Part shown: piece after piece, positions 41,422-64,000 of the stretch
Layout: every line of letters starts with the position of its first letter
How positions within the stretch are numbered: the first letter of the stretch is position 1
Virus record (IMG/VR): IMGVR_UViG_3300010885_076238
Span: 62,001-126,000 of that record
DNA: 64,000 nucleotides
Direction: 5' to 3' (one strand)
The notes under the pieces: model-generated
The model's database searches: none
The model's input: only the letters and a program-made list of their open reading frames with translations
Told to the model about the DNA's origin: nothing
Position numbers and translations under genes: made by a program

Positions 41422-42345
41422 ATGGAACCAAAAGAAGCACATAAGGCCGCAAGGTCTGGCGAAATGCGTTGGACAGACGCAATAGAAATTTTCAAGAAAG
41501 ATCCCCAAACTGCTTTCGATTATGCGTCAGAAAATCGATCTAGATTTCTAGAAGCAGAAGAATACATCAAAACCAATGCTGAATTAGCTTGTGCATATGC
41601 ACAACGATTTATCAATGGAAGGTTTCCAGAAGCAGAAGAATACATTAAAAAAGATGCTCAACAGGCTTATAATTATGCCAGATATGTGATTAAAGGTAGA
41701 TTCCCAGAAGCAGAAGAACATATCAAAATCAACCCTGCGGTCGCTTGCAATTATGCAGATAGTGTGCTTGACGAAAGATTCTTAGAAGCAGAAGAATTTA
41801 TCAAACAAGACCCAAGAATTGCATTTGAGTACGCAAGAAGAGTAATTAGGGGAAGATGGATTGAAGCAGAAGATCATATTAAAATAGATGCTCAATCTGC
41901 TTACTTATATGCAAGAGATATTCTAGATCGAAGATGGGAAGAAGCAGAAGAATATATTAAAAAGCAGCCTGACTATGCCTGTGCATATGCAAGAAATGTA
42001 ATCAGAGGCAGATGGGAAGAAGCAGAGCCTTTTATCAAGAACGAAGTATTTGAAGCATTTGGTTATGCAAAAGATATTATCAGAGGTAGATTCTTAGAAG
42101 CAGAGAGCTTGATTAAAAAGAATTTGAGCATTGCTTTTGATTATGTTGAAGAAGTAGTAAAAGGAAGATGGATTGAAGCAGAAGATACCATTCTTAATGG
42201 CAAAAAGAAATCTCTAGAATATTGTTTGCGATATAACGCAAAATTGCCAGAAGCAATTCATAACAAAGTGTTAACAGAAGTTGCTTTTGATAGTAAAGTG
42301 CCAAACCTTGATCTTAAAAAGAAATATGTGAACAGGATCAAGTGA
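41422..42345 (+). CDS. 26-aa helical-repeat protein, LP-HN-M family
   Basis: About 9 regular units AxxYAxxVIxGR[W/F]xEAExxIK; AKLPEAIHNKV; leaderless promoter at 41391-41415. Confidence 0.88.
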   Translation: MEPKEAHKAARSGEMRWTDAIEIFKKDPQTAFDYASENRSRFLEAEEYIKTNAELACAYAQRFINGRFPEAEEYIKKDAQQAYNYARYVIKGRFPEAEEHIKINPAVACNYADSVLDERFLEAEEFIKQDPRIAFEYARRVIRGRWIEAEDHIKIDAQSAYLYARDILDRRWEEAEEYIKKQPDYACAYARNVIRGRWEEAEPFIKNEVFEAFGYAKDIIRGRFLEAESLIKKNLSIAFDYVEEVVKGRWIEAEDTILNGKKKSLEYCLRYNAKLPEAIHNKVLTEVAFDSKVPNLDLKKKYVNRIK

Positions 42346-45432: not shown

Positions 45433-46521
45433 ATGCCTAATACAATTACGCCAATCGAAGCAGCAAGCCTTTACTTCAAAGAAGGCTCAAGTGATAAAGT
45501 TTACAATGCTACCTTGGAAAAAGAGGATGACAACAAATATGTTGTTAATTTCTCTTACGGCAGACGAGGAAGTGCATTGAAGTCTGGATCCAAAACCTCA
45601 AGCCCCGTTTCTCTTAAGGAAGCCAAGACCATCTTTGACAAAATTGTCAGAGAGAAAACTTCTAAGGGCTATAAATACGTCACCGACGCTGTTGCTAAAG
45701 AAATTCATGTTGCCGACAACCCACCGGACACGCCTACTGAGTCCAAGTGCGTTTTGCTCAATCCAATCAGCGAAGAAGAACTTGAAAAGTATTTGAACGA
45801 TCCAGATTGGATTGCCCAACAGAAAATTGATGGAGTTAGATTTATGCTCCATAAGGTAAAAGATAAAATTACTGCGTATAACCGTCGCGGACTTTACGCA
45901 AACATTCCAACCGATCTTTATAATTTCGCAAAAAACACTCAAGAAGATTTTCTAGTTGATGGAGAATTGATTGGAGATGTTTTTCACACCTTCGATATTC
46001 TTGAATATAACGGCAAAGACCTTACTCAAAACTCAGTTGTCGAAAGGCTTGAGGTTTTGTTGAATTGGGTTAATAATAATCCGTGCGAACTTGTAAAGTA
46101 TACAGAAACTCAAAGTTCAAGCAAAATTGAATTTTATGATCGTCTTGTTCGTGAAAACCAAGAAGGAATTGTTTTCAAACATAAAGACGCAAAGTATTAT
46201 GCTGGTAGGCCCGCCAGCGGTGGAAAGTATGTAAAATATAAGTTTTACAGCACTTGTAGTTGTGTCGTGACTGATGTGAATAATAAAAGAAGCGTAAGTA
46301 TAGGCTTGCTCAATGGCAAAAAATTAGTTGATGCTGGGAATGTTACTATTCCTATCAATTTTGAAATTCCTAATAAGGATGACATTGTGGAAGTCAGATA
46401 CCTTTATGCAAGAAAGCAGTCTGGCTCTCTTTATCAGCCTGTGTATCTTGGCAAAAGAACCGATATTGTTAGAGAAGATTGCAAGCAAAGTCAACTGAAG
46501 TATAAATTTGATGATGAATAA
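45433..46521 (+). CDS. WGR-domain + ATP-dependent DNA ligase
   Basis: WGR: SSDKVY...YGRRG...EKTSKGY; ligase: QKIDG, DGEL, FDIL, EGIVFK, KYKF; OB fold VEVRY, LYQPVY. Confidence 0.85.
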   Translation: MPNTITPIEAASLYFKEGSSDKVYNATLEKEDDNKYVVNFSYGRRGSALKSGSKTSSPVSLKEAKTIFDKIVREKTSKGYKYVTDAVAKEIHVADNPPDTPTESKCVLLNPISEEELEKYLNDPDWIAQQKIDGVRFMLHKVKDKITAYNRRGLYANIPTDLYNFAKNTQEDFLVDGELIGDVFHTFDILEYNGKDLTQNSVVERLEVLLNWVNNNPCELVKYTETQSSSKIEFYDRLVRENQEGIVFKHKDAKYYAGRPASGGKYVKYKFYSTCSCVVTDVNNKRSVSIGLLNGKKLVDAGNVTIPINFEIPNKDDIVEVRYLYARKQSGSLYQPVYLGKRTDIVREDCKQSQLKYKFDDE

Positions 46522-51737: not shown

Positions 51738-52691
51738 ATGAACGCTAAAGAATCATACTTTCACGCAAAAAATGTTCTCAAAGGAAGAAGCAAAGACTTT
51801 GAAGATCATATATTAAAAACCAAATGGAATTGTTGGTCAGAAGATCATAAGTATTACAACCTTTATTTTAAAAATATACTCAAAGGCAGATGGGAAGAAT
51901 TAGAAAATCGCCTTGTAAAAGACATTGTGGCTCCAAAAAAAGGAGATATGCTTTCGCACAACGAGTGGAACATAGCAATAAATTATTGTGAAAATATTAA
52001 TGAAAGATGCAATGAATTAGAAGAAAAAATATTATCTCTTGTTAAAAATTGGCGCTTTGATGATATGGCAATAAACTATTGTGAAAAAGTCATCAAAGGA
52101 AGATGGGAAGAATTAGAAGAAATTATTAAAAAAGAGCCAAATTCCCTTTCTCGCGCACACACTTGCTACTTGTACGCAGAAAGAATCATAAAAGGCAGAT
52201 GGAAGGAAGCAGAAGAACTTATTAAAGAAGAACCAAGAGTCGCTGTTGATTATGCTAGAGAAATAATCAAAGGCAGATGGAATGAAGCAGAGCCATACAT
52301 TCTAAAAAATGAATTATGGGCATTCAATTATGCAAGAGACATAATCAAAGATAGATGGATCGAAGCAGAAAATATTATTACAGGCTCCGCACAAAAATAT
52401 TACAAACAACTTGTTAAAAATAAAATTCTCGACCTGTTACAAAAAAAAGATTATGACAATGTTTTGAAATACGTTGATTATAAGCACTTCACTAATATCA
52501 TTAAAAATGCAGAGAAAAAGCACCACATTCCAGATGCTATCCGAAATGCGATGATGGCATCCTGCATCACAGGAAACGACCAAAACAGCACCAGCTTTTT
52601 CAAACAAGAAAAAATCTTCAAGGAAAAAATGAAAAATTTCTTGAAAGATTATAAAGGATTACTTGTTGATGATGTAATCGACAAGCTATAA
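51738..52691 (+). CDS. helical-repeat protein, LP-HN-M family
   Basis: IKGRWxE[L/A]E units; IPDAIRNAMMA; terminal VDDVIDKL. Confidence 0.85.
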   Translation: MNAKESYFHAKNVLKGRSKDFEDHILKTKWNCWSEDHKYYNLYFKNILKGRWEELENRLVKDIVAPKKGDMLSHNEWNIAINYCENINERCNELEEKILSLVKNWRFDDMAINYCEKVIKGRWEELEEIIKKEPNSLSRAHTCYLYAERIIKGRWKEAEELIKEEPRVAVDYAREIIKGRWNEAEPYILKNELWAFNYARDIIKDRWIEAENIITGSAQKYYKQLVKNKILDLLQKKDYDNVLKYVDYKHFTNIIKNAEKKHHIPDAIRNAMMASCITGNDQNSTSFFKQEKIFKEKMKNFLKDYKGLLVDDVIDKL

Positions 52692-52733
52692 AATAATAAT
52701 TAATATCATTGGTTATCAAGCAGAGGAACAAAT

Positions 52734-53552
52734 ATGACCCCACAAGAAGCATATTCTGAATTAATTAATCTTTTCAATAGCTCCCGACGAGGAATCGTCT
52801 TTTACTTTAAAGATTTTATTAATGCACCCGAACACAAAAAAGAAGTAGATGAACTAAAAAAAATAATTATTCAAGACCCCTTCACCGCTTCAGATTTTGC
52901 AATAAGTTCCGGCGAAAGATGGATCGAAGCAGAAGAAATTATTAAAACAAATCCAAAAATATTAAGCCATTATTTTTGTATGTTGTTTACAAGGGAATTC
53001 AAAAGAAGATGGAATGAAGCAGAAGCAGATATTCTAAAAGGAACTCCTAATAGTGTTTGGGATTATTATAAACCTGTGCAGTATCATGTGTCAAACTCTT
53101 TCCCAGACAATGTTTGGATAGAAGCAGAACCAGTTTTTGAAAAGAAAATGAGCATCTTTCATCAATATGTTCTAACCACAAAAAAGCCCAACAAAACCTA
53201 TGAACAAAAAATATTAAATGATCCAAGTTCTAAATATAATCCCAAATACATCTATGACTACTCTTCCAAAGTTCTACAAAGCAGATGGAAAGAAGCAGAA
53301 CATATAATATTAAAAAATCCAGACTACGCAGCAAAATATTGCTCGAAATTTAAGATGGTAGTTCCAGAAGAAATTCATAACCAAATAGTTGCAGAAGTCG
53401 CCTTAACCGACAAATCTTCCTCTTTCAGAAAGAAATTTCTCCAAGATCAAACCAAAAGAAAAGAAAAATTTTTAGAATATCTCAAAGAACTTGTTAGTAG
53501 TAATGTTATTAACAAAGATAGCACAGTTGAAGAATTAATAAATAATATTTAA
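52734..53552 (+). CDS. helical-repeat protein, LP-HN-M family
   Basis: RWIEAE units; VPEEIHNQIVA; terminal TVEELINNI. Confidence 0.85.
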   Translation: MTPQEAYSELINLFNSSRRGIVFYFKDFINAPEHKKEVDELKKIIIQDPFTASDFAISSGERWIEAEEIIKTNPKILSHYFCMLFTREFKRRWNEAEADILKGTPNSVWDYYKPVQYHVSNSFPDNVWIEAEPVFEKKMSIFHQYVLTTKKPNKTYEQKILNDPSSKYNPKYIYDYSSKVLQSRWKEAEHIILKNPDYAAKYCSKFKMVVPEEIHNQIVAEVALTDKSSSFRKKFLQDQTKRKEKFLEYLKELVSSNVINKDSTVEELINNI

Positions 53553-53571
53553 TCCCAACCGTTATAACACT

Positions 53572-54441
53572 ATGACAACTCTAAAAATCCCCAAGTTCAG
53601 AAATGCCAAAAGAGCAGCAGAGTTTGCTGTTAAACACAAAGTTACACTAAACGAAGAAACAGAAAAATTAATAGCACAAGACGCTGTAGCGTCCTACAAC
53701 TACGCATATCACGTTAAAGGCAAATTTGAACTTGCTGAACCCTTAATCGCTAAAGATTTGCATTTAGCAGTAATCTACGCCATCTATATTCTAAAAGGTA
53801 GATTCTATCTGGCCGAAAAAATGATTGCAGAATCTATCACAGAATATGGCTTGAAAAAAGAAAATTTCTATAACGCACCAGCATTTAATTACGCAAGAAG
53901 TGTTTGCCAAGGAAGATTTGAACTATTAGAACCATTAATTATTAATGATCCTGATCTTTGCTATCATTACGCCGCAGATGTTATTGGAGGAAGATGGGAG
54001 GAAGGAGAACCAACAATAGCAAAAGATTTACAACTTTCTCTGAATTATGCAAGATATGTATTAGACGGAAGATTTGAACTAGCAGAACCCTTGCTTGCAC
54101 AAGACTCAGACTACGCTTTTGAATACGCATCAGATGTTATTAACAGATATATAACTAACTGCGACTACAGAGACAGAACAAATAAACTTGCAAAAAGATT
54201 TGAACTTGGTGAAGAAGCTATTTCTAAAAATATTAAGAAATTAGCAAAATATATCGATCTAACCAAACAAGAACTAACAGGCACTATTCACAACATGATG
54301 ATCGCAAGAAGCCTAACCGATGACCTTCTTTCAAAAACATACTTCGATTACATCAGCGATAATAAAAAAACACTACTAGAGTATTTGAGCAAATATCCCG
54401 AAAATATGACCGTAAAAGAAATAACCCAATCTCTTAGTTAA
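53572..54441 (+). CDS. helical-repeat protein, LP-HN-M family
   Basis: PKFRNAKRA N-motif; GRFELAE units; LTGTIHNMMIA; leaderless promoter at 53541-53565. Confidence 0.85.
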   Translation: MTTLKIPKFRNAKRAAEFAVKHKVTLNEETEKLIAQDAVASYNYAYHVKGKFELAEPLIAKDLHLAVIYAIYILKGRFYLAEKMIAESITEYGLKKENFYNAPAFNYARSVCQGRFELLEPLIINDPDLCYHYAADVIGGRWEEGEPTIAKDLQLSLNYARYVLDGRFELAEPLLAQDSDYAFEYASDVINRYITNCDYRDRTNKLAKRFELGEEAISKNIKKLAKYIDLTKQELTGTIHNMMIARSLTDDLLSKTYFDYISDNKKTLLEYLSKYPENMTVKEITQSLS

Positions 54442-54469
54442 TAATAATTATTCCAAACCGTTATGAGGT

Positions 54470-55174
54470 ATGGAAGAACTAAACGAAATTATCATCTGCT
54501 CAATCCTCAACAAACTGAAAATTGATGCTATCGCCACTGTTTCAGAACAACTCAGTTGGGCAGATGCAGATGAAGATGGAAAAGTAGACGGCGGTGTGCA
54601 TTATTTTTTGGAACTTGACGCACTAAAAGAAACAAGAGAAAGATTAGTAAAAGAAATTCTTGAAGGATTCAATCGTCCAGAAATTCGAAATTATAGATTC
54701 AACAATAGCATCAAATACTCAAAAGTGCATCAGTTACAAGAAAACGAAAAACACATAAAGGAAATAAAATTTTTCGGAATCAACAGCAAAAATAAAACAA
54801 TAGAACCAATAAGTGAAAAATTAGATAAAAATATTAAAGATCTACTGCCAGAAAAAGTATACAATTTTATTATTGCAAAATGTTTGGTAGATGAAAATCA
54901 TAAACATATACTCAGTCTAAATGGATTAGATTTAATTCTCAATTATTGGAAAAATAATCTCCCCGATACAGATAATGATTGTTGGTCGGGTGACGGAAAT
55001 TCACAATATTTTTGGGAAGTGTTGTTCAAAGAAAACAACCAAATAAACGTAGATTATGGAGGCGAATTTGGAGCAGGCGAACTAAATTTCTATAGCCACA
55101 GTCAAGATTTATTAAAATATGATTTTTGGAAGGTTTTTACCGAAAATTATCCAAAAATTACTAATAATTCATAA
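54470..55174 (+). CDS. hypothetical protein (paralogue of 57301-57921)
   Basis: MEELNEIII vs MQEFNEIII; LPEKVYNFIIA; promoter at 54440-54464. Confidence 0.75.
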   Translation: MEELNEIIICSILNKLKIDAIATVSEQLSWADADEDGKVDGGVHYFLELDALKETRERLVKEILEGFNRPEIRNYRFNNSIKYSKVHQLQENEKHIKEIKFFGINSKNKTIEPISEKLDKNIKDLLPEKVYNFIIAKCLVDENHKHILSLNGLDLILNYWKNNLPDTDNDCWSGDGNSQYFWEVLFKENNQINVDYGGEFGAGELNFYSHSQDLLKYDFWKVFTENYPKITNNS

Positions 55175-55182
55175 ATAAAATT

Positions 55183-55761
55183 ATGACAACATTCAAAGAA
55201 TGGCTATGGAATAAAACCAAAGAACCCGAATACAAAGACTATAGTGCCTATGCCGCTGCTGTTGCTGCCAAAGAGAAAGAGCAGAAGGATAAGGATTCTA
55301 AGTACAATACAGTAAAAATAGACGATATTGAGATTCAAGGCGATGAAGACTTTATAAATAAAACAAAAAGTGCCTTATCACTATTATCACGCTCAAAAAC
55401 CTTCCAAGAAATTAAAAAATATTTAGGAAAGATAAAACAACACCGAGCGTCAGGAATGGTTCCTTATGCAAAACCACCCACTTTTGAAGTCGCAAAACCA
55501 ACATACTCAAGCGGTTCAAAATGGTACGCATCTGGTATCGCACACGATACCTACCACTCTTATCTTTATCACAACAATCAAGAATGGCATGGCAAAAAAG
55601 CAGAACAAGAATGTATTGCAATACAAATAAAGGTACATGACGAAATAGTTGGGAAAAGAATAATTCCAAACCCAATAGATCACCTTAATAAAAGATATCT
55701 GCAATCAATAAAAGATAATCCTACCCATCAAGACATTCCTTACGAAAAACGAGATTGGTAA
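55183..55761 (+). CDS. putative internal head protein, zincin-like (HDxxH)
   Basis: MTTFKEWL; WYASGIAHDTYHS...AEQEC; ATAAATA at 55171-55177. Confidence 0.6.
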   Translation: MTTFKEWLWNKTKEPEYKDYSAYAAAVAAKEKEQKDKDSKYNTVKIDDIEIQGDEDFINKTKSALSLLSRSKTFQEIKKYLGKIKQHRASGMVPYAKPPTFEVAKPTYSSGSKWYASGIAHDTYHSYLYHNNQEWHGKKAEQECIAIQIKVHDEIVGKRIIPNPIDHLNKRYLQSIKDNPTHQDIPYEKRDW

Positions 55762-55852
55762 ATTCATAAAAATAATTCTATATATGAATTAATAATAATT
55801 AATCAAATTCGTTATAACACTATGGCCCAAAACATGAACCCAAAGATAATCA

Positions 55853-56068
55853 ATGGATAACGAAATGGTTAGTATGATTCAAACCTTAATCGATAAGTTC
55901 TCTAGTGAGCAAAAACGATTAGAACAAAAGATTATAAAAGGCTCTATTAAAGAATCTGTCTCAAACGATGAACTTTTAGCCCTAGCAAAAGACTTGGTTT
56001 CTGAAATCAAAAAGATCAAAAGAATCATACTTACGCTAGAAGATATTAAAAGTATGATGAATAATTAA
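55853..56068 (+). CDS. coiled-coil hypothetical protein
   Basis: Promoter at 55791-55815. Confidence 0.6.
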   Translation: MDNEMVSMIQTLIDKFSSEQKRLEQKIIKGSIKESVSNDELLALAKDLVSEIKKIKRIILTLEDIKSMMNN

Positions 56069-56329
56069 TTGGATAACACGATGAGAAAACGAATTTTGTC
56101 TGATGATGAAATTATAGAATCTATTAATATTTTCTATAATTCAAATCAATTACAAGAAAATTACGCAAGAATATCCGTTATGCGAAGAATTTTAAATAAA
56201 CCCCTACACGAAAATATAGCAAACGTGGCAGAAGAATCAATTACTGTCGCCTGCAAAGAAACACCCAAAATTATCGACCTTATACAAAACAAAGATACCA
56301 AAGAAAAAATATTACTACTCGTATTATAA
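56069..56329 (+). CDS. hypothetical protein
   Basis: Abuts upstream stop. Confidence 0.55.
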   Translation: MDNTMRKRILSDDEIIESINIFYNSNQLQENYARISVMRRILNKPLHENIANVAEESITVACKETPKIIDLIQNKDTKEKILLLVL

Positions 56330-56521
56330 TCATTTCTTATCGCTGCTGATTAGATTTAAATAACCGCCGCAATTCCTACATTTGGCTTTACCAGCATTTA
56401 TATCATACATTTTGGCCTTTTCTTTGTTTCCGCATCTACTGCACTCAGCATTACGATGGCCTTGAGGAGCATTTTTAGTTTTCGCTTCTAATATTTGTTG
56501 AAACTCATAAAAATTAATCAT
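56330..56521 (-). CDS. small zinc-ribbon protein with capsid-targeting-like N-terminus
   Basis: MINFYEFQQILEA; CSRC...CRNC; TAAATA (minus, 56540-56545) and AAGGAG. Confidence 0.7.
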   Translation of the reverse strand: MINFYEFQQILEAKTKNAPQGHRNAECSRCGNKEKAKMYDINAGKAKCRNCGGYLNLISSDKK

Positions 56522-56573
56522 AATATCTCCTTTTATTTTTATTTAGATTTGTGCAAATAAAAATCAACTTGAA

Positions 56574-56606
56574 AATATTAATAATTCCAAACCGTTATAC
56601 AGTATG
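56574..56606 (+). repeat. 33-bp promoter/start repeat identical to 57271-57303
   Basis: AATATTAATAATTCCAAACCGTTATACAGTATG at both sites; the last 23 nt also at 57927-57949. Confidence 0.9.
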
Positions 56607-57272
56607 AGATACGAAAAAGTAGAACCAAGAGAAATTAAATACTACTACAGCAACTATATTGAGAACGAAAATGTAACAAACTTCTTCGCACAAAAATACG
56701 CGGGAGATAAAACCACCACAGAAGAACTAAACCTACTACAAATTCTTATCTCAAATGTTACAAAAAATATACTTGAAAAAACAAAATCAACCCAAGATTG
56801 TATAGTATTTGACCCTACCACAGAAGATTTTTTTGTAACCGATCTAGATTCTTTCCAAAATCAACGCAGTTTTTTCTACCGAAGCGACTTTACTGATTTT
56901 TCAACTAAATGGAACGAAAATTGTTTACCAAGTTTACATAATGCAAAATTAATAAAAAATCGAAAAGTAGATACGCTGCTTTTTGATAATGTTCGACAAC
57001 ACCTAGATGAAAAAGTATTTAATGCTCTATTGGCTACCGCCGCTTTTTGCCAAGATGAACTCAAAAATTACACAAATGTTTCTTGCGGCTTCTTATTCAA
57101 ATTCTTATCCACTCAGCACTACAACGCACATAAAGAAAAATATTATGAGCAAATAAGTCAAGAATATTACATTTGCAAACAGTACGAAGGACAAGTTGTT
57201 ATAGCAAACAAAAAAACAGTAAATTTAATGCCTATCGAATGGAATGATGTAAATATTGATTATAACCCTTAA
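56604..57272 (+). CDS. hypothetical protein
   Basis: Leaderless; degenerate LDEKVFNALLA motif. Confidence 0.7.
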   Translation: MRYEKVEPREIKYYYSNYIENENVTNFFAQKYAGDKTTTEELNLLQILISNVTKNILEKTKSTQDCIVFDPTTEDFFVTDLDSFQNQRSFFYRSDFTDFSTKWNENCLPSLHNAKLIKNRKVDTLLFDNVRQHLDEKVFNALLATAAFCQDELKNYTNVSCGFLFKFLSTQHYNAHKEKYYEQISQEYYICKQYEGQVVIANKKTVNLMPIEWNDVNIDYNP

Positions 57273-57300
57273 TATTAATAATTCCAAACCGTTATACAGT

Positions 57301-57921
57301 ATGCAAGAATTCAACGAAATTATTATTAAGTCAATATTTAAGAAATTAAATATTGATTGCCTCATTCTAAGCCAAAAAGATTTCGTCGCTCACGATAAAG
57401 AAGATTGCTGGGTAAATCACAAACTAAGAAAGAAAATCTTCGCCCTAAAAAATGACAAAGTGTCCCTCGTAGAACTCAGCCTAAAAGACTCATTGCCCGA
57501 AAAAGTCTACAACTATATCTTGGCAGAATCCTTGGCTAAAGATTCTAAAGAATTATTAAAAAGCCCAAGAGAAATCCTTATGGATATGTGGAAAAACTTT
57601 CGTCCAGACCTAGATGATGAATTATTTGATGATGATTGCGGCAACGACGAAAGAAACGAAAGAAACGGAGCAATGGAATTTATAAGTTATTGGATCTTCT
57701 TGTATCTAGAAAATAATGAAGTAAAAATTAAATACTCTGTGCGTGACGTTAAACGCTCAGGATGGAACAACGAAGAAGTAAAAATTCCAGATATAATATC
57801 AATAAGAACATCAGAAGATGACCTCAAATACCAAGAAAAAACCAACCTTATAATCTCAGAAGATGACCTCAAAAACCCTATGTGGGAAAAAATCTGCTGC
57901 AAAGATAATTGGATAAAATAA
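57301..57921 (+). CDS. hypothetical protein (paralogue of 54470-55174)
   Basis: Leaderless ATG 57301; LPEKVYNYILA. Confidence 0.75.
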   Translation: MQEFNEIIIKSIFKKLNIDCLILSQKDFVAHDKEDCWVNHKLRKKIFALKNDKVSLVELSLKDSLPEKVYNYILAESLAKDSKELLKSPREILMDMWKNFRPDLDDELFDDDCGNDERNERNGAMEFISYWIFLYLENNEVKIKYSVRDVKRSGWNNEEVKIPDIISIRTSEDDLKYQEKTNLIISEDDLKNPMWEKICCKDNWIK

Positions 57922-57966
57922 TAATTATTCCAAACCGTTATACAGTATGAACCAAAAGGAAGCCAA

Positions 57967-58593
57967 ATGACTAAATACCCACCTATCGATCCAAAAGAAG
58001 TCTACGACAGCCTCTATACCCGTTCTAAGAATATTGTAGACTGGTATGAGTTTCTCGGAGATCACAATATCGAAACAATCTCATACTTAGACCCTTGCAC
58101 TATGGAATCTAAGGGAAATAAATTCGTTGTTTGTGACGATCCTGCCGGTGGACGTTCTCTTAAAATCCCTGAGCAACTTGCCCACGAAATTAGAGGAAAT
58201 CCTTATTTTGATGTTGAAGCAACCGATGCTGACCTTCCAAGAATCGAAGCCGCACTAGACAATCTCTCAGAACAAGATAAAGAAATTGTCGAAAAAGCAA
58301 AAGAATACGGCGACGGTTCTGGAAATAGAAACACAGAAGTTTCTCTCACCGTTAATCTATATTGCAATTGGGACGGCGATCTATTATTTCCAACAGTAAT
58401 CGTAGACGAAATAGCCAATCACGATACCCTCAAATATGGGGTAAATTGGGATAAAGCAAAAGAACTTGAACATAAGGCGAAAAAAGAAGTTCTTAATAAA
58501 GTCGCCCAATATAAGAACATCGTTATTAAAATCGCCACAGAACTTAAAATTAACTCACACGATGTTCATGAGTATATTATGGGATGGGGATGA
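57967..58593 (+). CDS. hypothetical protein
   Basis: AAGGA RBS; promoter at 57917-57941. Confidence 0.75.
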   Translation: MTKYPPIDPKEVYDSLYTRSKNIVDWYEFLGDHNIETISYLDPCTMESKGNKFVVCDDPAGGRSLKIPEQLAHEIRGNPYFDVEATDADLPRIEAALDNLSEQDKEIVEKAKEYGDGSGNRNTEVSLTVNLYCNWDGDLLFPTVIVDEIANHDTLKYGVNWDKAKELEHKAKKEVLNKVAQYKNIVIKIATELKINSHDVHEYIMGWG

Positions 58594-58717
58594 TGAAAAT
58601 TAGATTTCAAGATGAAATTATGCAAAAGCATTACGAGTCTTTAATAAAAGATGGGTATCATTGGAAAATAGCAGAAATCAAAACAATAAAAAGATTTGAA
58701 GAATATGACCAATAAGA

Positions 58718-59098
58718 TTACCCCAATGCTTTTTTAATTTGTCCACTATCCAACGCAGGACTTCTTAATTTCGCAACAACATAATCCCTAAGTTGCTTAC
58801 TACTCACTTTTCTCAGTTCTCCCACAATGCCATTGTTTTTTATCACAGGCAGTTCCATCAAATTATCCACGCCCAAAGGCTCTGTAGCATCGTAATACCT
58901 TCCATCGTAATAAATGAAAGCATGAGCATCATCTGCAAATAATTGACCCGATTTTAAATAATATTTAGCAGCCAATGCCCAATTATAACAATGACCACGA
59001 TTAATAATCTCTGGACTCATTCCAGAAAATATTTTTTCACTTATAATCGATAAATCAACCGATTCTAATATGTTGTAAAATTTATAAAAATTAATCAT
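58718..59098 (-). CDS. Cys-His-Asp (transglutaminase/papain-like) protein with capsid-targeting-like N-terminus
   Basis: MINFYKFYNILES; NRGHCYNWA, HAF, YYDA; ATAAATA on minus strand at 59105-59111. Confidence 0.6.
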   Translation of the reverse strand: MINFYKFYNILESVDLSIISEKIFSGMSPEIINRGHCYNWALAAKYYLKSGQLFADDAHAFIYYDGRYYDATEPLGVDNLMELPVIKNNGIVGELRKVSSKQLRDYVVAKLRSPALDSGQIKKALG

Positions 59099-59139
59099 CT
59101 TAATTATTTATCCAAGAATTTAATAATTGTAAATAATGA

Positions 59140-59676
59140 GTGGAAAAAAATATATCACTCATAGGAAATTGCCAAACAACAGCATTATGTAAGTTTCTCA
59201 GACAACTAAAATATAACGCTAAATGGCTATGCTTTGAAACAGAATGGATAAATTCCAATTGGCCCAAAAACCAATCATTGTTTCAAAATCAAATTCAACA
59301 TAATATCTTCGACCAAAACGATTGTGTAAACTTCCTAAAAATATCAGATATTATCATATTCCAACCAAATTACTTACATTGCAATGTAGTTGATAATTAT
59401 AAAAATGATACCGCCCAAACTATTACACTATCTCCCGTTTTTGTTAATAATTTAGATTACATCTTAGAAAAAGAATCAAAATATCAAACCAATGTTAAAA
59501 TATCCAGTATCATCAGCCAATACCCTAAAGAAAAATTGTACGTTATAAACGATAACCACCTATCAACACTACTAACACTAGAAATACTAAAACAAATAGC
59601 CAACTTGGCTAACCTGCAATTCTTCGACAATATCACCTACCAAGAATTAATAAAAATACAATACCCTAATTATTAA
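59140..59676 (+). CDS. WcbI-like polysaccharide-biosynthesis protein
   Basis: LIGNCQTTAL...DIIIFQP. Confidence 0.5.
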   Translation: MEKNISLIGNCQTTALCKFLRQLKYNAKWLCFETEWINSNWPKNQSLFQNQIQHNIFDQNDCVNFLKISDIIIFQPNYLHCNVVDNYKNDTAQTITLSPVFVNNLDYILEKESKYQTNVKISSIISQYPKEKLYVINDNHLSTLLTLEILKQIANLANLQFFDNITYQELIKIQYPNY

Positions 59677-59723
59677 TTTTCCCAAATCGTTATCTCATAT
59701 CAACCCGACATAAGGATAAAACC

Positions 59724-60035
59724 ATGCCATTTGCTCTTTACCCCTCAAGAACGTACTCTCAAGATTTAGAACTGCTCAAAGAATTGGGCATAAAGCCATT
59801 CCAAGCACCAGACCAAGAAGAAATTCTAGTCGGTCAATATAAGCCGCCACACCACAAAAGAGCAAAAGTGAAAATATGGGTGAGTTGTATGCCTGCTCAA
59901 TTTTGGCGATTTGAGATCATCACAGAAGAAAACAAGAAGTTTGAAGTTCAAACCGGCTCAGGATGTTTATCAGAATATTGGCCGGGAGTATTGAAAATCG
60001 CAGAAGGTATGATGGAAGTGAAATCACTAAAATGA
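59724..60035 (+). CDS. hypothetical protein
   Basis: AAGGA RBS; variant promoter at 59669-59693. Confidence 0.7.
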   Translation: MPFALYPSRTYSQDLELLKELGIKPFQAPDQEEILVGQYKPPHHKRAKVKIWVSCMPAQFWRFEIITEENKKFEVQTGSGCLSEYWPGVLKIAEGMMEVKSLK

Positions 60036-60594
60036 ATTTATTAATTATTGTGGGTTATCTACCCAAATCTAACCTTTTATAATATTTAGCTGTGGGAAAC
60101 TAACCCATCTGCACAAATTTTGGTTCACCTAATAAATTAAATAATGGCTAATATTTAATTATAAAAATAGGGTCTAGTTAAATTAAGTAATAAATTTATT
60201 AAAAAAGGTAGTGCTTAGACCCCCTTTATAATTATAACTAACTAACGGGGAAATATAGTTTTCTAATAAAATCTAAGGGTTTCTAGTAAAATCTAGGTAA
60301 AAACAATGTATATTACTAATTATGAGTATCTGAGTGCGTTATTGAGTGTATTATTGATGGGAGTTGGGTTGGGGCTTTCATTGAGTAAGCTATTTTTTGT
60401 TGAATAATTAAAAAATAAGTAGAAAATAATCTCTTCTGCACAAATTTTGGTAGAGATTATATAGAAAATTAATAAAAAATAGTTTTTACGATATTGGGTG
60501 GTACTTTTTTTAAAGTAAAAAGACACCTGATGTTTATTTTGTATCTGGTATAATAATATTTTGTCTTATTCGATATGGTATACCGGAGGATAGA
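60036..60594. other. putative replication origin / strand-asymmetry switch
   Basis: Longest largely non-coding AT-rich tract; C>G to the left, G>C to the right; contains direct repeats, palindromes and hairpins. Confidence 0.55.
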
Positions 60595-61341
60595 ATGGCT
60601 AAGATAAACTTATTGGACTTTTCTAAGACGTTCTCGTTGAATAGTCATGGATACAGGGGAGATTACTGGTCTAATTCTACTATAGGCGCTCCTGCTGGCG
60701 GGGGTGCTTGGACATTATCTTCTGATTTTGAAGTTGCTGTTATCAATAAGATAGTTAGTTGGAGTGATTGGAAGGGTTGTCCTGAGAATATTTTGTTATT
60801 GGCCTTTTTTAAGAAGGCTGGGAAGTTATCGGACAACAGTATTTTCTACAGCAATATTAATTCAATAAAGAGACATAGTCATTGGCGTGGATGTGACGTA
60901 GTTTATACATTTTGTAGGAATGTATTGAAGGGTAGGTTGCCGAGTGGAGCGGAGGGGAATTTTCTTTCGGACATATGGGATAATCATTATGGTAGTAGGT
61001 TTGCATATAAGTATGCTAAGTATGTGATTCGTGGTCGGTTGCCTGTGGAGTATGAGAAGGGTTGTCAGAGTCTTGATTACTTGGGATTTTTGGAGACTAA
61101 GGGGATAGAGATTAGTGATATATTAATTAATAGTACGGCTTTATCCTTTAGTTACTACAAGTATTTTTATCATTTGCCTGAGGTTGTTCATAATTTTATG
61201 TTGGCGATGCAGTTGAGTGGAGATGGTTATGCTTCTGCTTATTTCCGTCAGCGTAATAAGGATGATGTTTTGATAAAGAACAGGTTGAAGATGGTTGATC
61301 CTAATAAGACTGTGAAGGAAGTATTGATGGGGTTGAAATGA
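60595..61341 (+). CDS. LP-HN-M family protein
   Basis: KGRLP/RGRLP units; HLPEVVHNFMLA; terminal KTVKEVL; GGAGG; promoter AATAAT-N13-CGATAT at 60552-60576. Confidence 0.75.
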   Translation: MAKINLLDFSKTFSLNSHGYRGDYWSNSTIGAPAGGGAWTLSSDFEVAVINKIVSWSDWKGCPENILLLAFFKKAGKLSDNSIFYSNINSIKRHSHWRGCDVVYTFCRNVLKGRLPSGAEGNFLSDIWDNHYGSRFAYKYAKYVIRGRLPVEYEKGCQSLDYLGFLETKGIEISDILINSTALSFSYYKYFYHLPEVVHNFMLAMQLSGDGYASAYFRQRNKDDVLIKNRLKMVDPNKTVKEVLMGLK

Positions 61342-61829
61342 ATATATTGGGTAGAATTTTATTGATAATTCCTTTTTGTAAATTGTTATATGATTACGTT
61401 CCTTCCTTGGACTTTTATAGTCTTAATTATCCTCTTGGAGCGTGGCTATTAATTTTATTGGGTTTGATTTCAATTTTATTTAATATTAGTAGAATATTGG
61501 GTATAATTTACATATTGGTTGGGTATGGGTTATACAGTTATTTTATACAGAGTGATATTTATAGTTTGTGGCCGGTTGGTGGTTTAATTTTATTAATTAG
61601 ATCAGATGTTAGTAAGAAGGTTGTGGAGAAGGTTGTTCCTGTAAAGGAGAAGGCAGTTGAGAAGGTAGTTCCTGCAAAGAAGAAAGTTGTAGTTGAGAAG
61701 GTAGTTCCTGTAAAAATTAATAAAACGAAGTCTGATGAATATTGGGAGAGGTATGACGCTCGCAATAAAAAGAATTTGTTTTTTAACTTAAAAGACAAAT
61801 TTAATAAATTATTGGTAGTGGGTAGGTAG
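61338..61829 (+). CDS. membrane protein with EKVVP repeats
   Basis: 3-4 TM segments, then three EKVVP units. Confidence 0.7.
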   Translation: MNILGRILLIIPFCKLLYDYVPSLDFYSLNYPLGAWLLILLGLISILFNISRILGIIYILVGYGLYSYFIQSDIYSLWPVGGLILLIRSDVSKKVVEKVVPVKEKAVEKVVPAKKKVVVEKVVPVKINKTKSDEYWERYDARNKKNLFFNLKDKFNKLLVVGR

Positions 61830-61949
61830 TAAATTAAAAAAAATTAAGTGTGGTTTTTTGCGGGGAAAAGTGAGCTTTACAAGAAAAAAAATTGGGCTAA
61901 AATGTTTGTTGTGTTTACGGTAAAATTTTTTTCACATGGAGGCTAAATT

Positions 61950-62423
61950 ATGCCCGCTGGAAGACCAAAGGGATCGAGTGGAACTAACAAGAGTTCGATT
62001 ATTCGGGAATACATTAAAGCTAATCCCACAGCGACTACGAATGAAGTGATGGAGGCGTTGGGTCAGAAGGGCATTGAGGTTAGTCAAGCTCTTGTGGCTG
62101 GAGTACGTTCTAGGGAGATGCGTGGCCCTGGGAATAAGAGTCGCAAGCGTGGTGAGATCACGGTTAGCGAATTGAATAGTATTAATGCGATGGTGGAGAA
62201 GTTTGATGATCGTTCTGTAATTATGAATATTATAGACGACATGACGACCTTGATTAAGGAAATTGGTGGTATTGATCGTTTTGAAGAAGCGATGAAGGAG
62301 TTCCAGAATTGGAAGCCTGAGTCTGAATCTTTGAAGGCGGAAGCTGCTTCTGACATATCTGGTGATGACGATGATGAGGATTCGGATGATGATGAGGACG
62401 AGGATGAAGACGAGGACGAATGA
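61950..62423 (+). CDS. AT-hook + winged-helix nucleoid-type protein with acidic tail
   Basis: GRPKGS; NKSSIIREYIKANPTATTNEVMEAL...GIEVS; poly-D/E tail; TTTACA-N16-TAAAAT at 61876-61903; GGAGG. Confidence 0.7.
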   Translation: MPAGRPKGSSGTNKSSIIREYIKANPTATTNEVMEALGQKGIEVSQALVAGVRSREMRGPGNKSRKRGEITVSELNSINAMVEKFDDRSVIMNIIDDMTTLIKEIGGIDRFEEAMKEFQNWKPESESLKAEAASDISGDDDDEDSDDDEDEDEDEDE

Positions 62424-62425
62424 AT

Positions 62426-62623
62426 TGGGAAGTTTTCGCTGACTTCCCATAGTTAAGCCTTCGGGTTAGGATCGCGGGTAATCCTTTAATTAACTGCCGT
62501 AGAGTTTTTAGAAGTTTCTGTAAGACTGAAATCTTCTATTGTTGGTTGCACAAATTTTAATAAAGAATATACTAGGGCCATTTCTGTGATATACTTTACA
62601 GAAGTGGCCTTAGTATTTCTTTA
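62426..62623 (+). ncRNA. candidate structured RNA (several hairpins)
   Basis: 8-bp stem 62426-62449; cUUCGg-containing junction 62451-62495; 28-bp stem 62561-62623 with 3 G-U pairs. Confidence 0.4.
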
Positions 62624-62671
62624 AACCAAGTAGGCATCTCCTGATGTTTATTTACTCAAGGAAGGGTAGGT

Positions 62672-62857
62672 ATGTTTAGGAATGAGAAGATAGTTGTTTT
62701 GGATATAGTTGATAGGTGTCTTAAGTTGGAGGATGATCGTGGTCAGATAATAAGTTTGATTTTTATTAAGGGTGGAAAATTAATAATTAAGGGTGAGTTG
62801 AAAGTTTCAGATAGTTCGATAGAGGCTCCAGAGATTAATTACTTGGATAAAAAATAA
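62672..62857 (+). CDS. hypothetical protein
   Basis: Short ORF with purine-rich leader. Confidence 0.55.
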   Translation: MFRNEKIVVLDIVDRCLKLEDDRGQIISLIFIKGGKLIIKGELKVSDSSIEAPEINYLDKK

Positions 62858-62894
62858 AAATAATTATGTATCGTTATGGGGTAGGAGACAAAAA

Positions 62895-63608
62895 ATGGAA
62901 AATACCCCTAAGAAGCCTACTGAAATTCTTCCTTATAGGGAAGAGGATTGGGCAGGCGTTAGCGTTCCTAAGTTTAGGGATGCGAGTCGTGCGTGGAAGT
63001 TTTTGAAGAAGCATGGTTTTTATCGGCTTCCTGAGAAAACTGAATTAGTATTTTTGAAGGATTTATCATTAGCGATAGATTATGCTGTTCGGGTAGGCAC
63101 TAGGTTGCCGGTTGTTTTTGAAACTGAGTTGAAGAAGCATCCTCAGTTGAGTTATGATTATATTTCTAGGGTGATTCAGGCGCCTTTGGAGGAATTTGAA
63201 GAAACTATTAGCAAGGTTCCTTCGTTGCTTGTGAAGTATAGTCATGAAATTTTAGAGGCGCCTTTGCCGGAGCATTTGGAAAATTGTTTGGCGGGTGATC
63301 CGTATAATTGTTTTGAATATGCGTGGCAGGTTCTTGACGGACGTTTGCCGGAAACTTTGCACAACTATATGTTTTGTGCTAACATGGACAATAACTTTGG
63401 ACGTAGGTATCGTGGTGGGTATCATACTAAGTTGAAGGGAGCAGAGGAATACAGTCCTGACTATGTTAGTCCAGAGACTTATTTTGAATTTATCAAGTGG
63501 CAAAGGAAAAATTTGCACAGGCAGATTCAGCATTATCAAAAAATTTATGGTGTTGAATCGAAGCAGACTGTTGGCGAATTTTTACATGAATTAGAGCATG
63601 GTCGTTAA
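62895..63608 (+). CDS. LP-HN-M family protein
   Basis: VPKFRDASRAW N-motif; GRLPETLHNYM; terminal QTVGEFL; promoter at 62853-62877. Confidence 0.8.
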   Translation: MENTPKKPTEILPYREEDWAGVSVPKFRDASRAWKFLKKHGFYRLPEKTELVFLKDLSLAIDYAVRVGTRLPVVFETELKKHPQLSYDYISRVIQAPLEEFEETISKVPSLLVKYSHEILEAPLPEHLENCLAGDPYNCFEYAWQVLDGRLPETLHNYMFCANMDNNFGRRYRGGYHTKLKGAEEYSPDYVSPETYFEFIKWQRKNLHRQIQHYQKIYGVESKQTVGEFLHELEHGR

Positions 63609-64000
63609 ATTATTTTTTACTGATGGGTCTAGTTCTATTCGATCTTTTTCGGATGAAGAATTAAGAGATTTAAAATTAAATAATAGTTTGAAAGATTATT
63701 TCTCAGAGCATTTGAGTCCAGATTTCCCTATTGACACCTTTGAAATATTTGATATAAAGAAGTGTCCGGTGGACAATGATTATAATTTACGGACATTCAA
63801 TTATCGGGATTATTTTAATTATTCTAAATCGTTTATAGGTTTAGAGATAGATGGTTGTGTAGTGGAGCGGGTGGAATTTTTTGACTATGATAGTTACGAG
63901 TATGGTTTGGATAGTTTGGATGGTGAGCCATACGAGCGTGGTGTAATTTTTAATTACACTATGGATCATTATTATTATTCAAAGGGAACAGTTGATCCAG
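63598..64000 (+). CDS. hypothetical protein, truncated by window edge
   Basis: ATG 63598 open to end of window (MVVKLFFTDG...). Confidence 0.6.
   Translation, partial: MVVKLFFTDGSSSIRSFSDEELRDLKLNNSLKDYFSEHLSPDFPIDTFEIFDIKKCPVDNDYNLRTFNYRDYFNYSKSFIGLEIDGCVVERVEFFDYDSYEYGLDSLDGEPYERGVIFNYTMDHYYYSKGTVDP

What the first reader, a model, noticed from the sequence alone, without database searches (positions are those of the whole stretch)
60036..60594. Abrupt GC-skew inversion at a repeat-rich intergenic region: probable origin with distance-decaying skew
Seen: genes stay on the + strand on both sides, yet composition flips. 59521-59580 has C15/G4 and 61081-61140 has C3/G17. Far left (3901-3960, C5/G14) the C excess is gone, so it builds only over roughly the last 10 kb. 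The gap holds two TGTGGG-N7-CCCA hairpins (60049, 60091), a 17-bp direct repeat TCTGCACAAATTTTGGT (60108, 60435; the second is exactly the loop of a 9-bp stem ATAATCTCT/AGAGATTAT), the palindrome TTATAATTATAA (60226) and a 20-bp-period tandem (60261-60300). Known: a C-rich to G-rich switch marks bidirectional origins. Inference: a fixed origin fires bidirectionally and then hands over to recombination-dependent replication; alternatively this is a junction of genome termini.
Basis: partly seen in the sequence, partly recalled or inferred. Interest (0 to 1): 0.72.

Follow-up and report, generated by a model that had tools for sequence, protein, structure and literature searches.

The report
Skew flip marking a phage origin
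In an uncultivated 200-kb freshwater phage and five relatives, one conserved non-coding element marks the exact point where the two DNA strands swap base composition, which is best read as the place where DNA copying starts in both directions.

Summary
The window is part of a 204-kb freshwater virus contig. At four-fold degenerate sites the + strand changes from A .46/C .21/G .055/T .27 (left) to A .14/C .13/G .23/T .505 (right), close to a mirror image. The jump in total skew is 1.81, against a standard deviation of 0.24 elsewhere in the contig. It decays almost symmetrically, with lengths of about 10 kb (left) and 12 kb (right).

The bias follows the DNA strand, not the coding strand, because genes on the minus strand carry it too. 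It is also present in intergenic DNA. Codon selection is therefore excluded, and transcription fits poorly. Independent contigs from two studies span the site, so it is not a misassembly.

Five related lineages show the same flip, each at a conserved non-coding element of about 330 bp that occurs once in this contig.

Best reading: a fixed, bidirectional replication initiation site, with origin-independent replication taking over further away. A joint of fixed genome ends predicts the same polarity and is not excluded.

The "hairpins" are weak as structures and are not DnaA boxes. The gap also holds a conserved 33-aa membrane-peptide gene. No polymerase, initiator or RecA-like gene was recognised.

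The parts
51738..60035 (+). Left arm. These + strand genes have a + strand rich in C and A. At four-fold sites A is .46, C .21, G .055 and T .27, against a baseline of A .335, C .146, G .089 and T .43. The bias is weaker but detectable back to about window 42000.
58718..59098 (-). The only minus-strand gene in the left arm. On its own coding strand it is G/T-rich at four-fold sites, which makes it C/A-rich on the + strand like its + strand neighbours. Only 39 sites are available.
60046..60300 (+). Core of the conserved non-coding element. It is 69-81% identical in DNA to relatives whose flanking proteins are only 43-63% identical, and it occurs once in the 204-kb contig. The cumulative keto-skew minimum is at 60306.
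60049..60065 (+). Site 1, TGTGGGTTATCTACCCA. This partial palindrome (GGG...CCC) is invariant in six lineages.
60091..60107 (+). Site 2, TGTGGGAAACTAACCCA. In the alignments it lies 42 columns after site 1 in every lineage.
60108..60124 (+). First copy of TCTGCACAAATTTTGGT. Its core TGCACAAAT recurs on the + strand at intergenic spots of the right-hand region here (62547 in the window, genome 146650) and in relatives, so it is a promoter-like or regulator-site motif. One further copy, at 6641, lies inside an ORF.
60124..60206 (.). Invariant TTCACC followed by an A+T-rich stretch of about 80 bp that contains the invariant TTAAATTAA. This is the candidate unwinding region.
60201..60237 (+). Conserved block AAAAAAGGTAG.G..TAG.CCCC.TTTATAATTATAA. 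It holds an invariant TATAAT at 60227-60232 but has no -35 match.
60260..60299 (+). Four CTA(A/G)-type repeats about 10 bp apart. Relatives have two to four CTAG(A/T)AA(A/C) repeats at the same place.
60306..60407 (+). Gene for a 33-aa hydrophobic peptide, MYITNYEYLSALLS.... It is conserved in four lineages, and differences by codon position are 45/14/72.
60426..60460 (+). Second copy of the 17-mer, in the loop of a 9-bp inverted repeat. A second TGCACAAAT copy is also present in L014.
60595..61341 (+). First large gene of the right arm. It is a 248-aa all-helical repeat protein found in all relatives, with no match among solved structures.
60595..64000 (+). Right arm, with a + strand rich in G and T. 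At four-fold sites A is .14, C .13, G .23 and T .505. It continues beyond the window and decays with a length of about 12 kb.

Best explanation
The gap at 60036-60594 holds the fixed replication initiation site of a lineage of large freshwater phages. DNA synthesis starts inside the conserved element and proceeds in both directions. To the right the + strand is the G/T-rich, leading-type or displaced strand. To the left the minus strand plays that role. Over evolutionary time, C-to-T and A-to-G changes on the exposed strand have produced mirror-image composition on the two sides. The bias fades with a length of about 10-12 kb. The likely reason is that, further from the site, a growing share of copying is done by forks of either direction that do not come from this origin, for example recombination-primed forks. 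The skew would then track a falling fork polarity. The layout is two conserved palindromic sites, then a promoter-like motif, then an A+T-rich stretch, at the head of the rightward (probably early) gene block. This suggests a transcription-activated origin like T4 oriF/oriG or the T7 primary origin. Shown here: the flip, its strand-bound mutational nature, its symmetry, its conservation and its anchoring on the element. Inferred: that the process is replication, how it starts, and why it decays.
For: (1) The polarity is that of an origin, with the cumulative GC and keto skew minima inside or next to the element. (2) The effect is strongest at four-fold degenerate sites, and the two arms are close to mirror images. 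Left-arm minus strand: T .46, G .21, C .055, A .27. Right-arm + strand: T .505, G .23, C .13, A .14. (3) The bias follows the DNA strand. The minus-strand gene at 58718-59098 follows it. So does a real minus-strand gene in the right arm of L011 and L012, whose differences by codon position are 18/13/34 and whose own third positions are A/C-rich. (4) Intergenic DNA has GC skew -0.25 on the left and +0.20 on the right, against +0.02 baseline. (5) Amino-acid usage shifts the same way. (6) The jump is 1.81 against an sd of 0.24 elsewhere. Amplitudes are -1.05 and +1.38, and decay lengths are 10.1 and 12.0 kb. (7) Six lineages aligned on the element all go from about -0.3 (-0.03 in L014) to +0.4 or +0.5 within 1 kb. 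(8) The element is conserved in DNA well above its protein-coding flanks and is unique in the contig. (9) Contigs from two independent studies span it. (10) A skew that is proportional to fork polarity, jumps at origins and declines between them is an established model (PMC3320577). Deamination of A and C on exposed single strands gives G/T-rich strands (PMC3269012). T4 origins consist of a promoter plus an A+T-rich unwinding element and give way to recombination-dependent replication (PMC3016281).
Against: There is no direct replication evidence: no coverage peak, no nascent-strand data and no origin assay. No initiator, DNA polymerase (PolA, PolB, protein-primed PolB, Pol III alpha), DnaB-type helicase or RecA-type recombinase was recognised in the 88%-complete contig. 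The machinery and the proposed recombination-dependent phase are therefore unsupported. No DnaA box with one mismatch or fewer lies in the gap. The conserved TATAAT has no -35 partner. AT skew is near zero in intergenic DNA although it is large at four-fold sites. Nearly all genes to the left would be head-on to a leftward fork. The skew amplitude is closer to that of mitochondrial DNA than to ordinary bacterial replichores, so simple leading/lagging asymmetry may not be enough.
Confidence: 0.5

Rival explanations
1. The element is the joint of fixed genome ends (cos-type ends or a short terminal repeat) as seen in concatemers or a circularised assembly. Replication is primed from the ends, by 3'-end invasion, strand displacement or protein priming. 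Synthesis then diverges from the joint and leaves the same footprint.
For: It predicts the same polarity and symmetry as an internal origin (reasoning). The element sits at the head of a long one-directional block of small genes, as at the first-entering end of T5, T7, N4 or SPO1 (my own knowledge). Many contigs start just left of it: X2 at 59824, X1 at 57946, L127 about 1 kb away, and the contigs of P0021 and P0014 within about 0.5-0.7 kb. Contig depth on the right is about 1.8 times that on the left in X1, X2 and X4.
Against: Contigs in three samples and in five relatives run through the element. This does not exclude ends, because concatemers or terminal repeats assemble through. No protein-primed polymerase and no Terminase_6N was recognised. 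A long terminal repeat of about 11 kb to the right would not give a symmetric peak at a single point. The depth step and the contig breaks are also explained by strain variation in a hypervariable stretch at 57.4-59.1 kb.
Confidence: 0.27
2. The flip is a transcription footprint. The element is only the strong first promoter of the early gene block. Heavy rightward transcription, with R-loops, exposes the + strand, and the left side differs for unrelated reasons.
For: The element carries promoter-like motifs (TGCACAAAT, which recurs at intergenic spots of the right-hand block, and a conserved TATAAT) and heads a one-directional gene block. A G-rich non-template strand favours R-loops (PMC3787257).
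Against: The left arm is transcribed rightward too, yet has the opposite bias with nearly equal amplitude and decay length. A real minus-strand gene in the right arm keeps the + strand bias. A leftward antisense transcript of 10-20 kb would be needed, and no motif copy on the minus strand was found in the left arm.
Confidence: 0.08
3. The flip is a module boundary. The right-hand block is foreign or is under different codon selection, for example early genes that avoid the A-ending codons served by the phage's own tRNAs.
For: G+C rises to 0.38-0.54 between about 124 and 166 kb of the contig. The phage tRNAs mostly read A-ending codons, and right-arm genes avoid A at third positions.
Against: Minus-strand genes follow the DNA strand, not their own coding strand. 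The GC skew is also present in intergenic DNA. The left arm deviates from baseline in the opposite direction, with a gradient. The adjacency and the flip are conserved in lineages whose marker protein is only 43-63% identical.
Confidence: 0.04
4. The flip is an assembly chimera that joins two unrelated sequences.
For: Composition changes abruptly, and G+C rises to the right.
Against: Logan contigs of 12,985 nt (X1), 11,101 nt (X2) and 12,082 nt (X3, a roughly 98%-identical variant from another study) cross it. Two JGI contigs carry the identical junction. Five related lineages have the same adjacency.
Confidence: 0.01

Closest known systems
Phage T4 origins oriF/oriG and the T4 switch to recombination-dependent replication (PMC3016281); T7 primary origin (my own knowledge)
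   Same: A promoter-like motif is followed by an A+T-rich stretch at the head of a transcription unit. A fixed origin is proposed to be used first, with origin-independent forks dominating later, which would explain a bias that fades with distance.
   Different: No R-loop, transcript or primer is shown here. No MotA-like factor, recombinase or polymerase was recognised. T4 is not known to me to carry such a local skew peak. The sequences are unrelated.
Skew jumps and N-shaped skew domains at mammalian replication origins (PMC3320577, PMC2764438)
   Same: There is an abrupt upward jump of the T-A plus G-C skew at a fixed initiation site, with a decline away from it that is read as falling fork polarity.
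   Different: The scale is 10 kb rather than about a megabase. The amplitude is roughly an order of magnitude larger by my recollection of the mammalian values. The decline fits an exponential, and this is a virus.
Strand-displacement footprint in vertebrate mitochondrial DNA (PMC3269012, PMC4182315)
   Same: The skews at four-fold sites are very large. The exposed strand is depleted in both C and A and enriched in T and G, and there is a gradient with distance from the origin.
   Different: Here the pattern is bidirectional and mirror-symmetric about one point, not one strand over the whole genome. Single-strandedness is inferred, not shown.
GC-skew origins reported for huge phages (PMC7162821) and bacterial oriC
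   Same: A switch from C-rich to G-rich is used to place an origin of bidirectional replication.
   Different: Those patterns span whole replichores from origin to terminus. Here the effect is local and no terminus is seen. No DnaA boxes with one mismatch or fewer were found.
Lambda-type iteron origins (my own knowledge)
   Same: Repeated protein-binding-like sites lie next to an A+T-rich stretch.
   Different: There are only two palindromic sites 42 bp apart plus short CTAG repeats, no array of 18-22-bp iterons, and no initiator gene recognised at the locus.

Membership tests
Replication origin inferred from compositional skew (origin polarity) | Skew switches from C/A-rich to G/T-rich on the reference strand, with the cumulative skew minimum at the site | tested here: met
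   The cumulative GC minimum is at 59855 and the keto minimum at 60306. In L012 the keto minimum (8307) lies inside the element, and in L011 and L014 within about 0.1-0.2 kb of it.
Replication origin inferred from compositional skew (origin polarity) | The bias is mutational and tied to the strand, not to gene orientation or codon choice | tested here: met
   Shown by four-fold sites, minus-strand genes and intergenic DNA.
Replication origin inferred from compositional skew (origin polarity) | Replication actually starts there (coverage peak, nascent strands, autonomous replication) | not testable with these tools
   Only assembled contigs were available, and the single read-laying run returned contigs.
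Bacterial oriC-type origin | A cluster of DnaA boxes (TTATCCACA) next to an unwinding element | tested here: not met
   No box with one mismatch or fewer lies in or near the gap. Two-mismatch matches occur at about the genome-wide density.
T4 oriF/oriG or T7-type transcription-activated origin | A promoter directly upstream of an A+T-rich unwinding element | tested here: inconclusive
   The recurring motif TGCACAAAT at 60110 is followed by an A+T-rich stretch of about 80 bp. Promoter activity is not shown, and the sigma-70 scan found no convincing site.
T4 oriF/oriG or T7-type transcription-activated origin | A persistent R-loop or transcript that primes leading-strand synthesis | not testable with these tools
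   No RNA data could be laid on the region.
Iteron (lambda or plasmid-type) origin | Three or more direct repeats bound by an initiator encoded at or next to the origin | tested here: not met
   There are two palindromic sites and short CTAG repeats only. Neighbouring genes have no Pfam or PHROG family above threshold, and the 248-aa protein has no structural match.
Phage genome terminus (cos site or terminal-repeat boundary) | Read starts and ends pile up at a fixed position, or there is a coverage step of two-fold over a terminal repeat | tested here: inconclusive
   Contigs carry no read ends. Right-hand contig depth is about 1.8 times the left in three runs, but strain splitting explains that too.
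Structured non-coding RNA | A match to a known RNA family or a stable conserved fold | tested here: not met
   Rfam gave only a chance-level hit with E = 0.33. Fold z-scores range from -1.75 to +0.56. The stems show no clear compensatory changes.

The most novel reading that the evidence does not exclude
This lineage of about 200-kb freshwater phages has no recognisable DNA polymerase, replicative helicase or recombinase. It may start replication at one fixed site by a mode that leaves the displaced or nascent strand single-stranded for long times on both sides, such as strand displacement or break-induced-type synthesis. That would write a symmetric, exponentially fading footprint of mitochondrial strength, with a length of about 10-12 kb, into the genome. 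The footprint would then be a sequence-only ruler of how far origin-dependent forks travel before origin-independent replication takes over in uncultivated phages.
Probability: 0.25. Interest if true: 0.78.

Novelty: new variant of a known kind. Interest (0 to 1): 0.62.

Why it matters
Replication origins of large uncultivated phages are almost never known. Here a single-copy conserved element can be proposed as one from sequence alone, and it can be tested in six lineages. The footprint is unusual in shape (local, symmetric and fading) and in strength. If it reflects fork polarity or single-strand exposure, it gives a way to read the replication mode (fixed origin against recombination-driven) directly from metagenomic genomes. 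It would also point to a replication system that current protein families do not recognise. There is a practical warning too: strong local skew and a G+C step inside a phage genome need not mean a chimeric assembly.

Tried and rejected
- Misassembly: rejected, because independent contigs and relatives span the junction.
- Codon-usage or tRNA-adaptation origin of the bias: rejected, because minus-strand genes follow the DNA strand.
- DnaA boxes: the TGTGGG sites match TGTGGATAA at only 7 of 9 positions. Such two-mismatch matches occur about 4 per kb genome-wide, and none with one mismatch or fewer is near.
- tRNA T-arm likeness of TGTGGG-N7-CCCA: the other genome hits of that pattern are a tRNA-Leu, a tRNA-Ala and an intron-bearing tRNA-like gene, but the loops here lack the T-loop consensus.
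- Known RNA family: none found. Stable hairpins: not supported.
- Function of flanking genes: Pfam and PHROGs gave only weak hits below the curated cut-offs for the neighbours. The AlphaFold model of the 248-aa protein is good (pLDDT 89), but no PDB match had E below 0.2.
- Search for the replication machinery: PolA, PolB, protein-primed PolB, Pol III alpha, DnaB, RecA and Terminase_6N were not found in the contig. The ESM Atlas gave only weak ART-like leads for two large unknown proteins.
- Relatives: none in the phage database by blastn. None in IMG/VR with two flanking proteins or with the site-2 DNA pattern.
- The two IMG/VR hits to GTTTCTAGTAAAATCTAGG gave no blastn match to the gap, and the one inspected (L017) looked unrelated.
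- The metagenome pattern scan returned mostly chance hits plus two identical copies of this phage.
- Extending the L012 record to follow its left arm: the record is not held.
- Polarising recent substitutions: L012/L013 and L014/L015 are almost identical, and L011 is too distant to serve as an outgroup.

Full report
**Where the window lies**

The window is bases 62001-126000 of a 204,311-bp linear IMG/VR virus contig that CheckV rates 88% complete. The same sequence occurs in freshwater metagenomes. The contig has about 30-33% G+C, except for a richer block (0.38-0.54) between about 124 and 166 kb. It carries 14 tRNA genes and a tmRNA. Most of its proteins have no family. Those recognised include a Dda-like helicase, a ResIII helicase, an SNF2 helicase, two ATP-dependent ligases, cobS/cobT-like AAA+/VWA pairs and a DUF2201 peptidase. 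No PolA, PolB, protein-primed PolB, Pol III alpha, DnaB, RecA or Terminase_6N domain was found.

**Check of the observation**

The 17-nt exact repeat exceeds all 2000 shuffles of the gap.

In 2-kb windows the GC skew runs from about -0.15 just left of the gap to +0.40 just right of it. The AT skew changes from about +0.16 to -0.07.

Two details need correcting.
- The proposed hairpins are not unusually stable.
- The gap is not empty. Bases 60306-60407 encode a 33-aa hydrophobic peptide that is conserved in four lineages. Its differences fall at codon positions 1/2/3 as 45/14/72.

**Is it an artefact?**

No. Logan contigs of 12,985 nt (run X1) and 11,101 nt (X2) cross the gap without a difference. 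A 12,082-nt contig from a different study (X3) crosses it at about 98% identity. Two JGI contigs carry the identical junction.

**What kind of bias is it?**

I separated mutation from selection in four ways.

1. *Four-fold degenerate sites.* The change there is larger than in bulk DNA.

| Region | A | C | G | T |
|---|---|---|---|---|
| Baseline, + strand genes | .335 | .146 | .089 | .43 |
| Left arm | .46 | .21 | .055 | .27 |
| Right arm | .14 | .13 | .23 | .505 |

Read on the opposite strand, the left arm (T .46, G .21, C .055, A .27) is close to a mirror image of the right arm.

2. *Genes on the minus strand.* These carry the bias of the DNA strand, not of their own coding strand.
   - In the left arm this is the gene at 58718-59098.
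   - In the right arm of relatives L011 and L012 it is a conserved gene of about 70 aa. Its differences by codon position are 18/13/34, so it is a real gene, and its own third positions are A/C-rich.
   - This excludes codon selection, including the attractive idea that early genes avoid the A-ending codons read by the phage's tRNAs.

3. *Intergenic DNA.* GC skew is -0.25 on the left and +0.20 on the right, against +0.02 baseline. AT skew is not seen there.

4. *Amino-acid usage.* It shifts in the expected direction.

**Shape of the signal**

I took total skew at four-fold sites as (G-C)/(G+C) + (T-A)/(T+A). It is -0.85 over the last 6 kb on the left and +0.96 over the first 6 kb on the right, a jump of 1.81. 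Adjacent 6-kb windows elsewhere give mean -0.02, sd 0.24 and maximum 0.75. Exponential fits give amplitudes of -1.05 and +1.38 and decay lengths of 10.1 kb (left) and 12.0 kb (right). The effect is therefore bidirectional, nearly symmetric and local.

**Relatives**

The first large gene to the right (60595-61341, 248 aa) has 22 homologues in metagenomes. I fetched five distinct lineages besides this one, all with the same gene order to the right: L011, L012/L013, L014/L015, L127 and L128.

All of them show the flip. Aligned on the element described below, the raw total skew changes from about -0.3 (-0.03 in L014) to +0.4 or +0.5 within 1 kb in all six.

**The conserved element**

At the flip point each lineage has the same non-coding element. 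It is 69-81% identical in DNA over about 330 bp in L127, L014 and L128, where the marker protein is only 46-63% identical. Shorter blocks are kept in L011 and L012.

In L011 and L012 the element lies about 1.5 kb upstream of the marker gene, separated from it by other small genes. The flip follows the element, not the gene. By nhmmer the element occurs once in the 204-kb contig.

Its conserved blocks are, in order:
- two GGG...CCC partial palindromes (60049 and 60091), 42 alignment columns apart in all lineages;
- TGCACAAAT;
- TTCACC;
- an A+T-rich stretch of about 80 bp with an invariant TTAAATTAA;
- AAAAAAGGTAG.G..TAG.CCCC.TTTATAATT;
- two to four CTAG(A/T)AA(A/C) repeats about 10 bp apart.

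The TGCACAAAT core recurs on the + strand at intergenic spots of the right-hand block in this phage and its relatives (one window copy, at 6641, lies inside an ORF), so it behaves like a promoter or regulator site.

**Interpretation**

A strand-bound mutational bias that reverses at one point, with the + strand G/T-rich to the right, is the signature of DNA synthesis diverging from that point. Two established ideas fit the fading.
- Skew is proportional to fork polarity. It therefore jumps at a fixed origin and declines where forks of both directions contribute (PMC3320577).
- Single-stranded DNA accumulates C-to-T and A-to-G changes in proportion to exposure time, as in mitochondrial strand-displacement replication (PMC3269012).

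The layout, a promoter-like motif followed by an A+T-rich stretch, resembles T4 oriF/oriG. T4 also provides the precedent for origins that give way to recombination-dependent replication (PMC3016281).

I therefore favour a fixed, probably transcription-activated, bidirectional origin whose forks dominate only the nearest 10-12 kb. The amplitude is closer to mitochondrial than to bacterial values, which suggests that prolonged single-strandedness contributes.

**Rivals**

- *A joint of fixed genome ends with end-primed replication.* This predicts the same polarity and symmetry, and I could not separate the two. Only contigs were available, which carry no read ends. The 1.8-fold depth step and the frequent contig breaks just left of the element can equally come from a hypervariable stretch at 57.4-59.1 kb. 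A long terminal repeat to the right would not give a symmetric peak at one point.
- *Transcription alone.* This fails on the left arm, which is transcribed rightward yet has the opposite bias.
- *Module boundary or codon selection.* This fails on the minus-strand genes.
- *DnaA boxes, a known RNA family and stable hairpins.* These were tested and not found.

**What is missing**

There is no initiator, no polymerase, no recombinase and no direct replication data. The G+C-rich block further right is a separate feature that the skew does not explain.

**Novelty**

Placing phage origins by skew is established. For huge phages, about 30% show bidirectional patterns (PMC7162821). What differs here is the local, symmetric, fading form, its mitochondrial-scale strength, and its anchoring on a conserved single-copy element across a family of uncultivated phages with no recognisable replication machinery. 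I rate it a new variant of a known kind.

Noticed in passing
window 60306-60407 (+): There is an unannotated gene for a 33-aa hydrophobic, single-helix peptide inside the 'intergenic' gap. It is the first gene of the rightward block in four lineages (33-35 aa, with codon-position differences of 45/14/72).
   Followed up: yes
window 6641, 60110, 60437, 62547; genome 146650; L011 9595 and 11923; L012 8385, 9595, 9654 and 11578; L014 9266, 9842 and 12153: The motif TGCACAAAT(T/A)TT recurs on the + strand at intergenic spots of the right-hand gene block in this phage and its relatives, in at least one case just after a terminator-like hairpin; the window copy at 6641 lies inside an ORF. It is likely a promoter or regulator site of unknown specificity, and no fixed -10 partner was seen.
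   Followed up: partly
L010:12817-13087 (genome 132817-133087, outside the window): A tRNA-like gene is interrupted by a group I intron (Rfam RF00028, 57.6 bits against a gathering score of 50). ARAGORN did not call it. The Logan contigs of X1 and X2 both end inside it, which suggests that strains differ in having the intron.
   Followed up: partly
genome about 124-166 kb (window 62000-64000 is its start): This is a block of 38-54% G+C in a 30-33% genome. Its small genes are mostly on the + strand. It includes a DUF2201 peptidase, two AAA_5/VWA (cobS/cobT-like) pairs, DUF932, DUF6011, an SNF2 helicase and five tRNA genes. Both G and C are raised at four-fold sites, so the skew does not explain it.
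   Followed up: partly
window 57400-59100: This is a hypervariable stretch among co-occurring strains. X3 has 814 extra bases near 57.9 kb, X4 lacks 258 bases (58756-59015), and several assemblies break here.
   Followed up: partly
window 57600-63500: Logan contig depth to the right of the gap is about 1.8 times the depth to the left in X1 (12.5 against 6.8), X2 (14.6 against 8.1) and X4 (7.7 against about 4). The cause could be a collapsed repeat, a replication gradient or strain splitting, and it was not resolved.
   Followed up: no
window 61614-61714, inside ORF 61338-61829: A 33-bp tandem repeat (3 copies, 82% matches) lies inside a coding region. The X3 strain has 21-nt and 15-nt deletions here.
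   Followed up: no
window 51738-54441 and 41422-42345; L012 600-1526 and 8540-9043; L014 2862-3332 and 6149-7090: This is a family of paralogous proteins with internal repeats, with weak sub-threshold likeness to the RepB/ParB partition family (E = 2e-5). Copies lie on both sides of the element in relatives.
   Followed up: partly
genome 184864-185213 (-), outside the window: The phage encodes a tmRNA with tag GTNSYAMAA. The ending resembles tags I recall from Bacteroidota and Chlorobi, which is a possible host clue, not tested. Nine tRNA genes lie elsewhere: one tRNA-Met at 37568 and eight clustered at 183-187 kb around the tmRNA.
   Followed up: no
window 3317-4591 and 45433-46521: There are two separate ATP-dependent DNA ligase genes in one phage genome, one of them with a WGR domain.
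   Followed up: no
window 62363-62420: An acidic low-complexity coding stretch attracts short unrelated contigs in all four runs, giving a depth spike of up to 41. This is a mapping artefact, not a feature of the phage.
   Followed up: no
genome 58185-59198 (L131:185-1198): A 337-aa protein has a sub-threshold match to sigma-70 region 2 (23.2 bits against a cut-off of 24). It may be a phage sigma factor, which would bear on the unusual promoter motifs.
   Followed up: no
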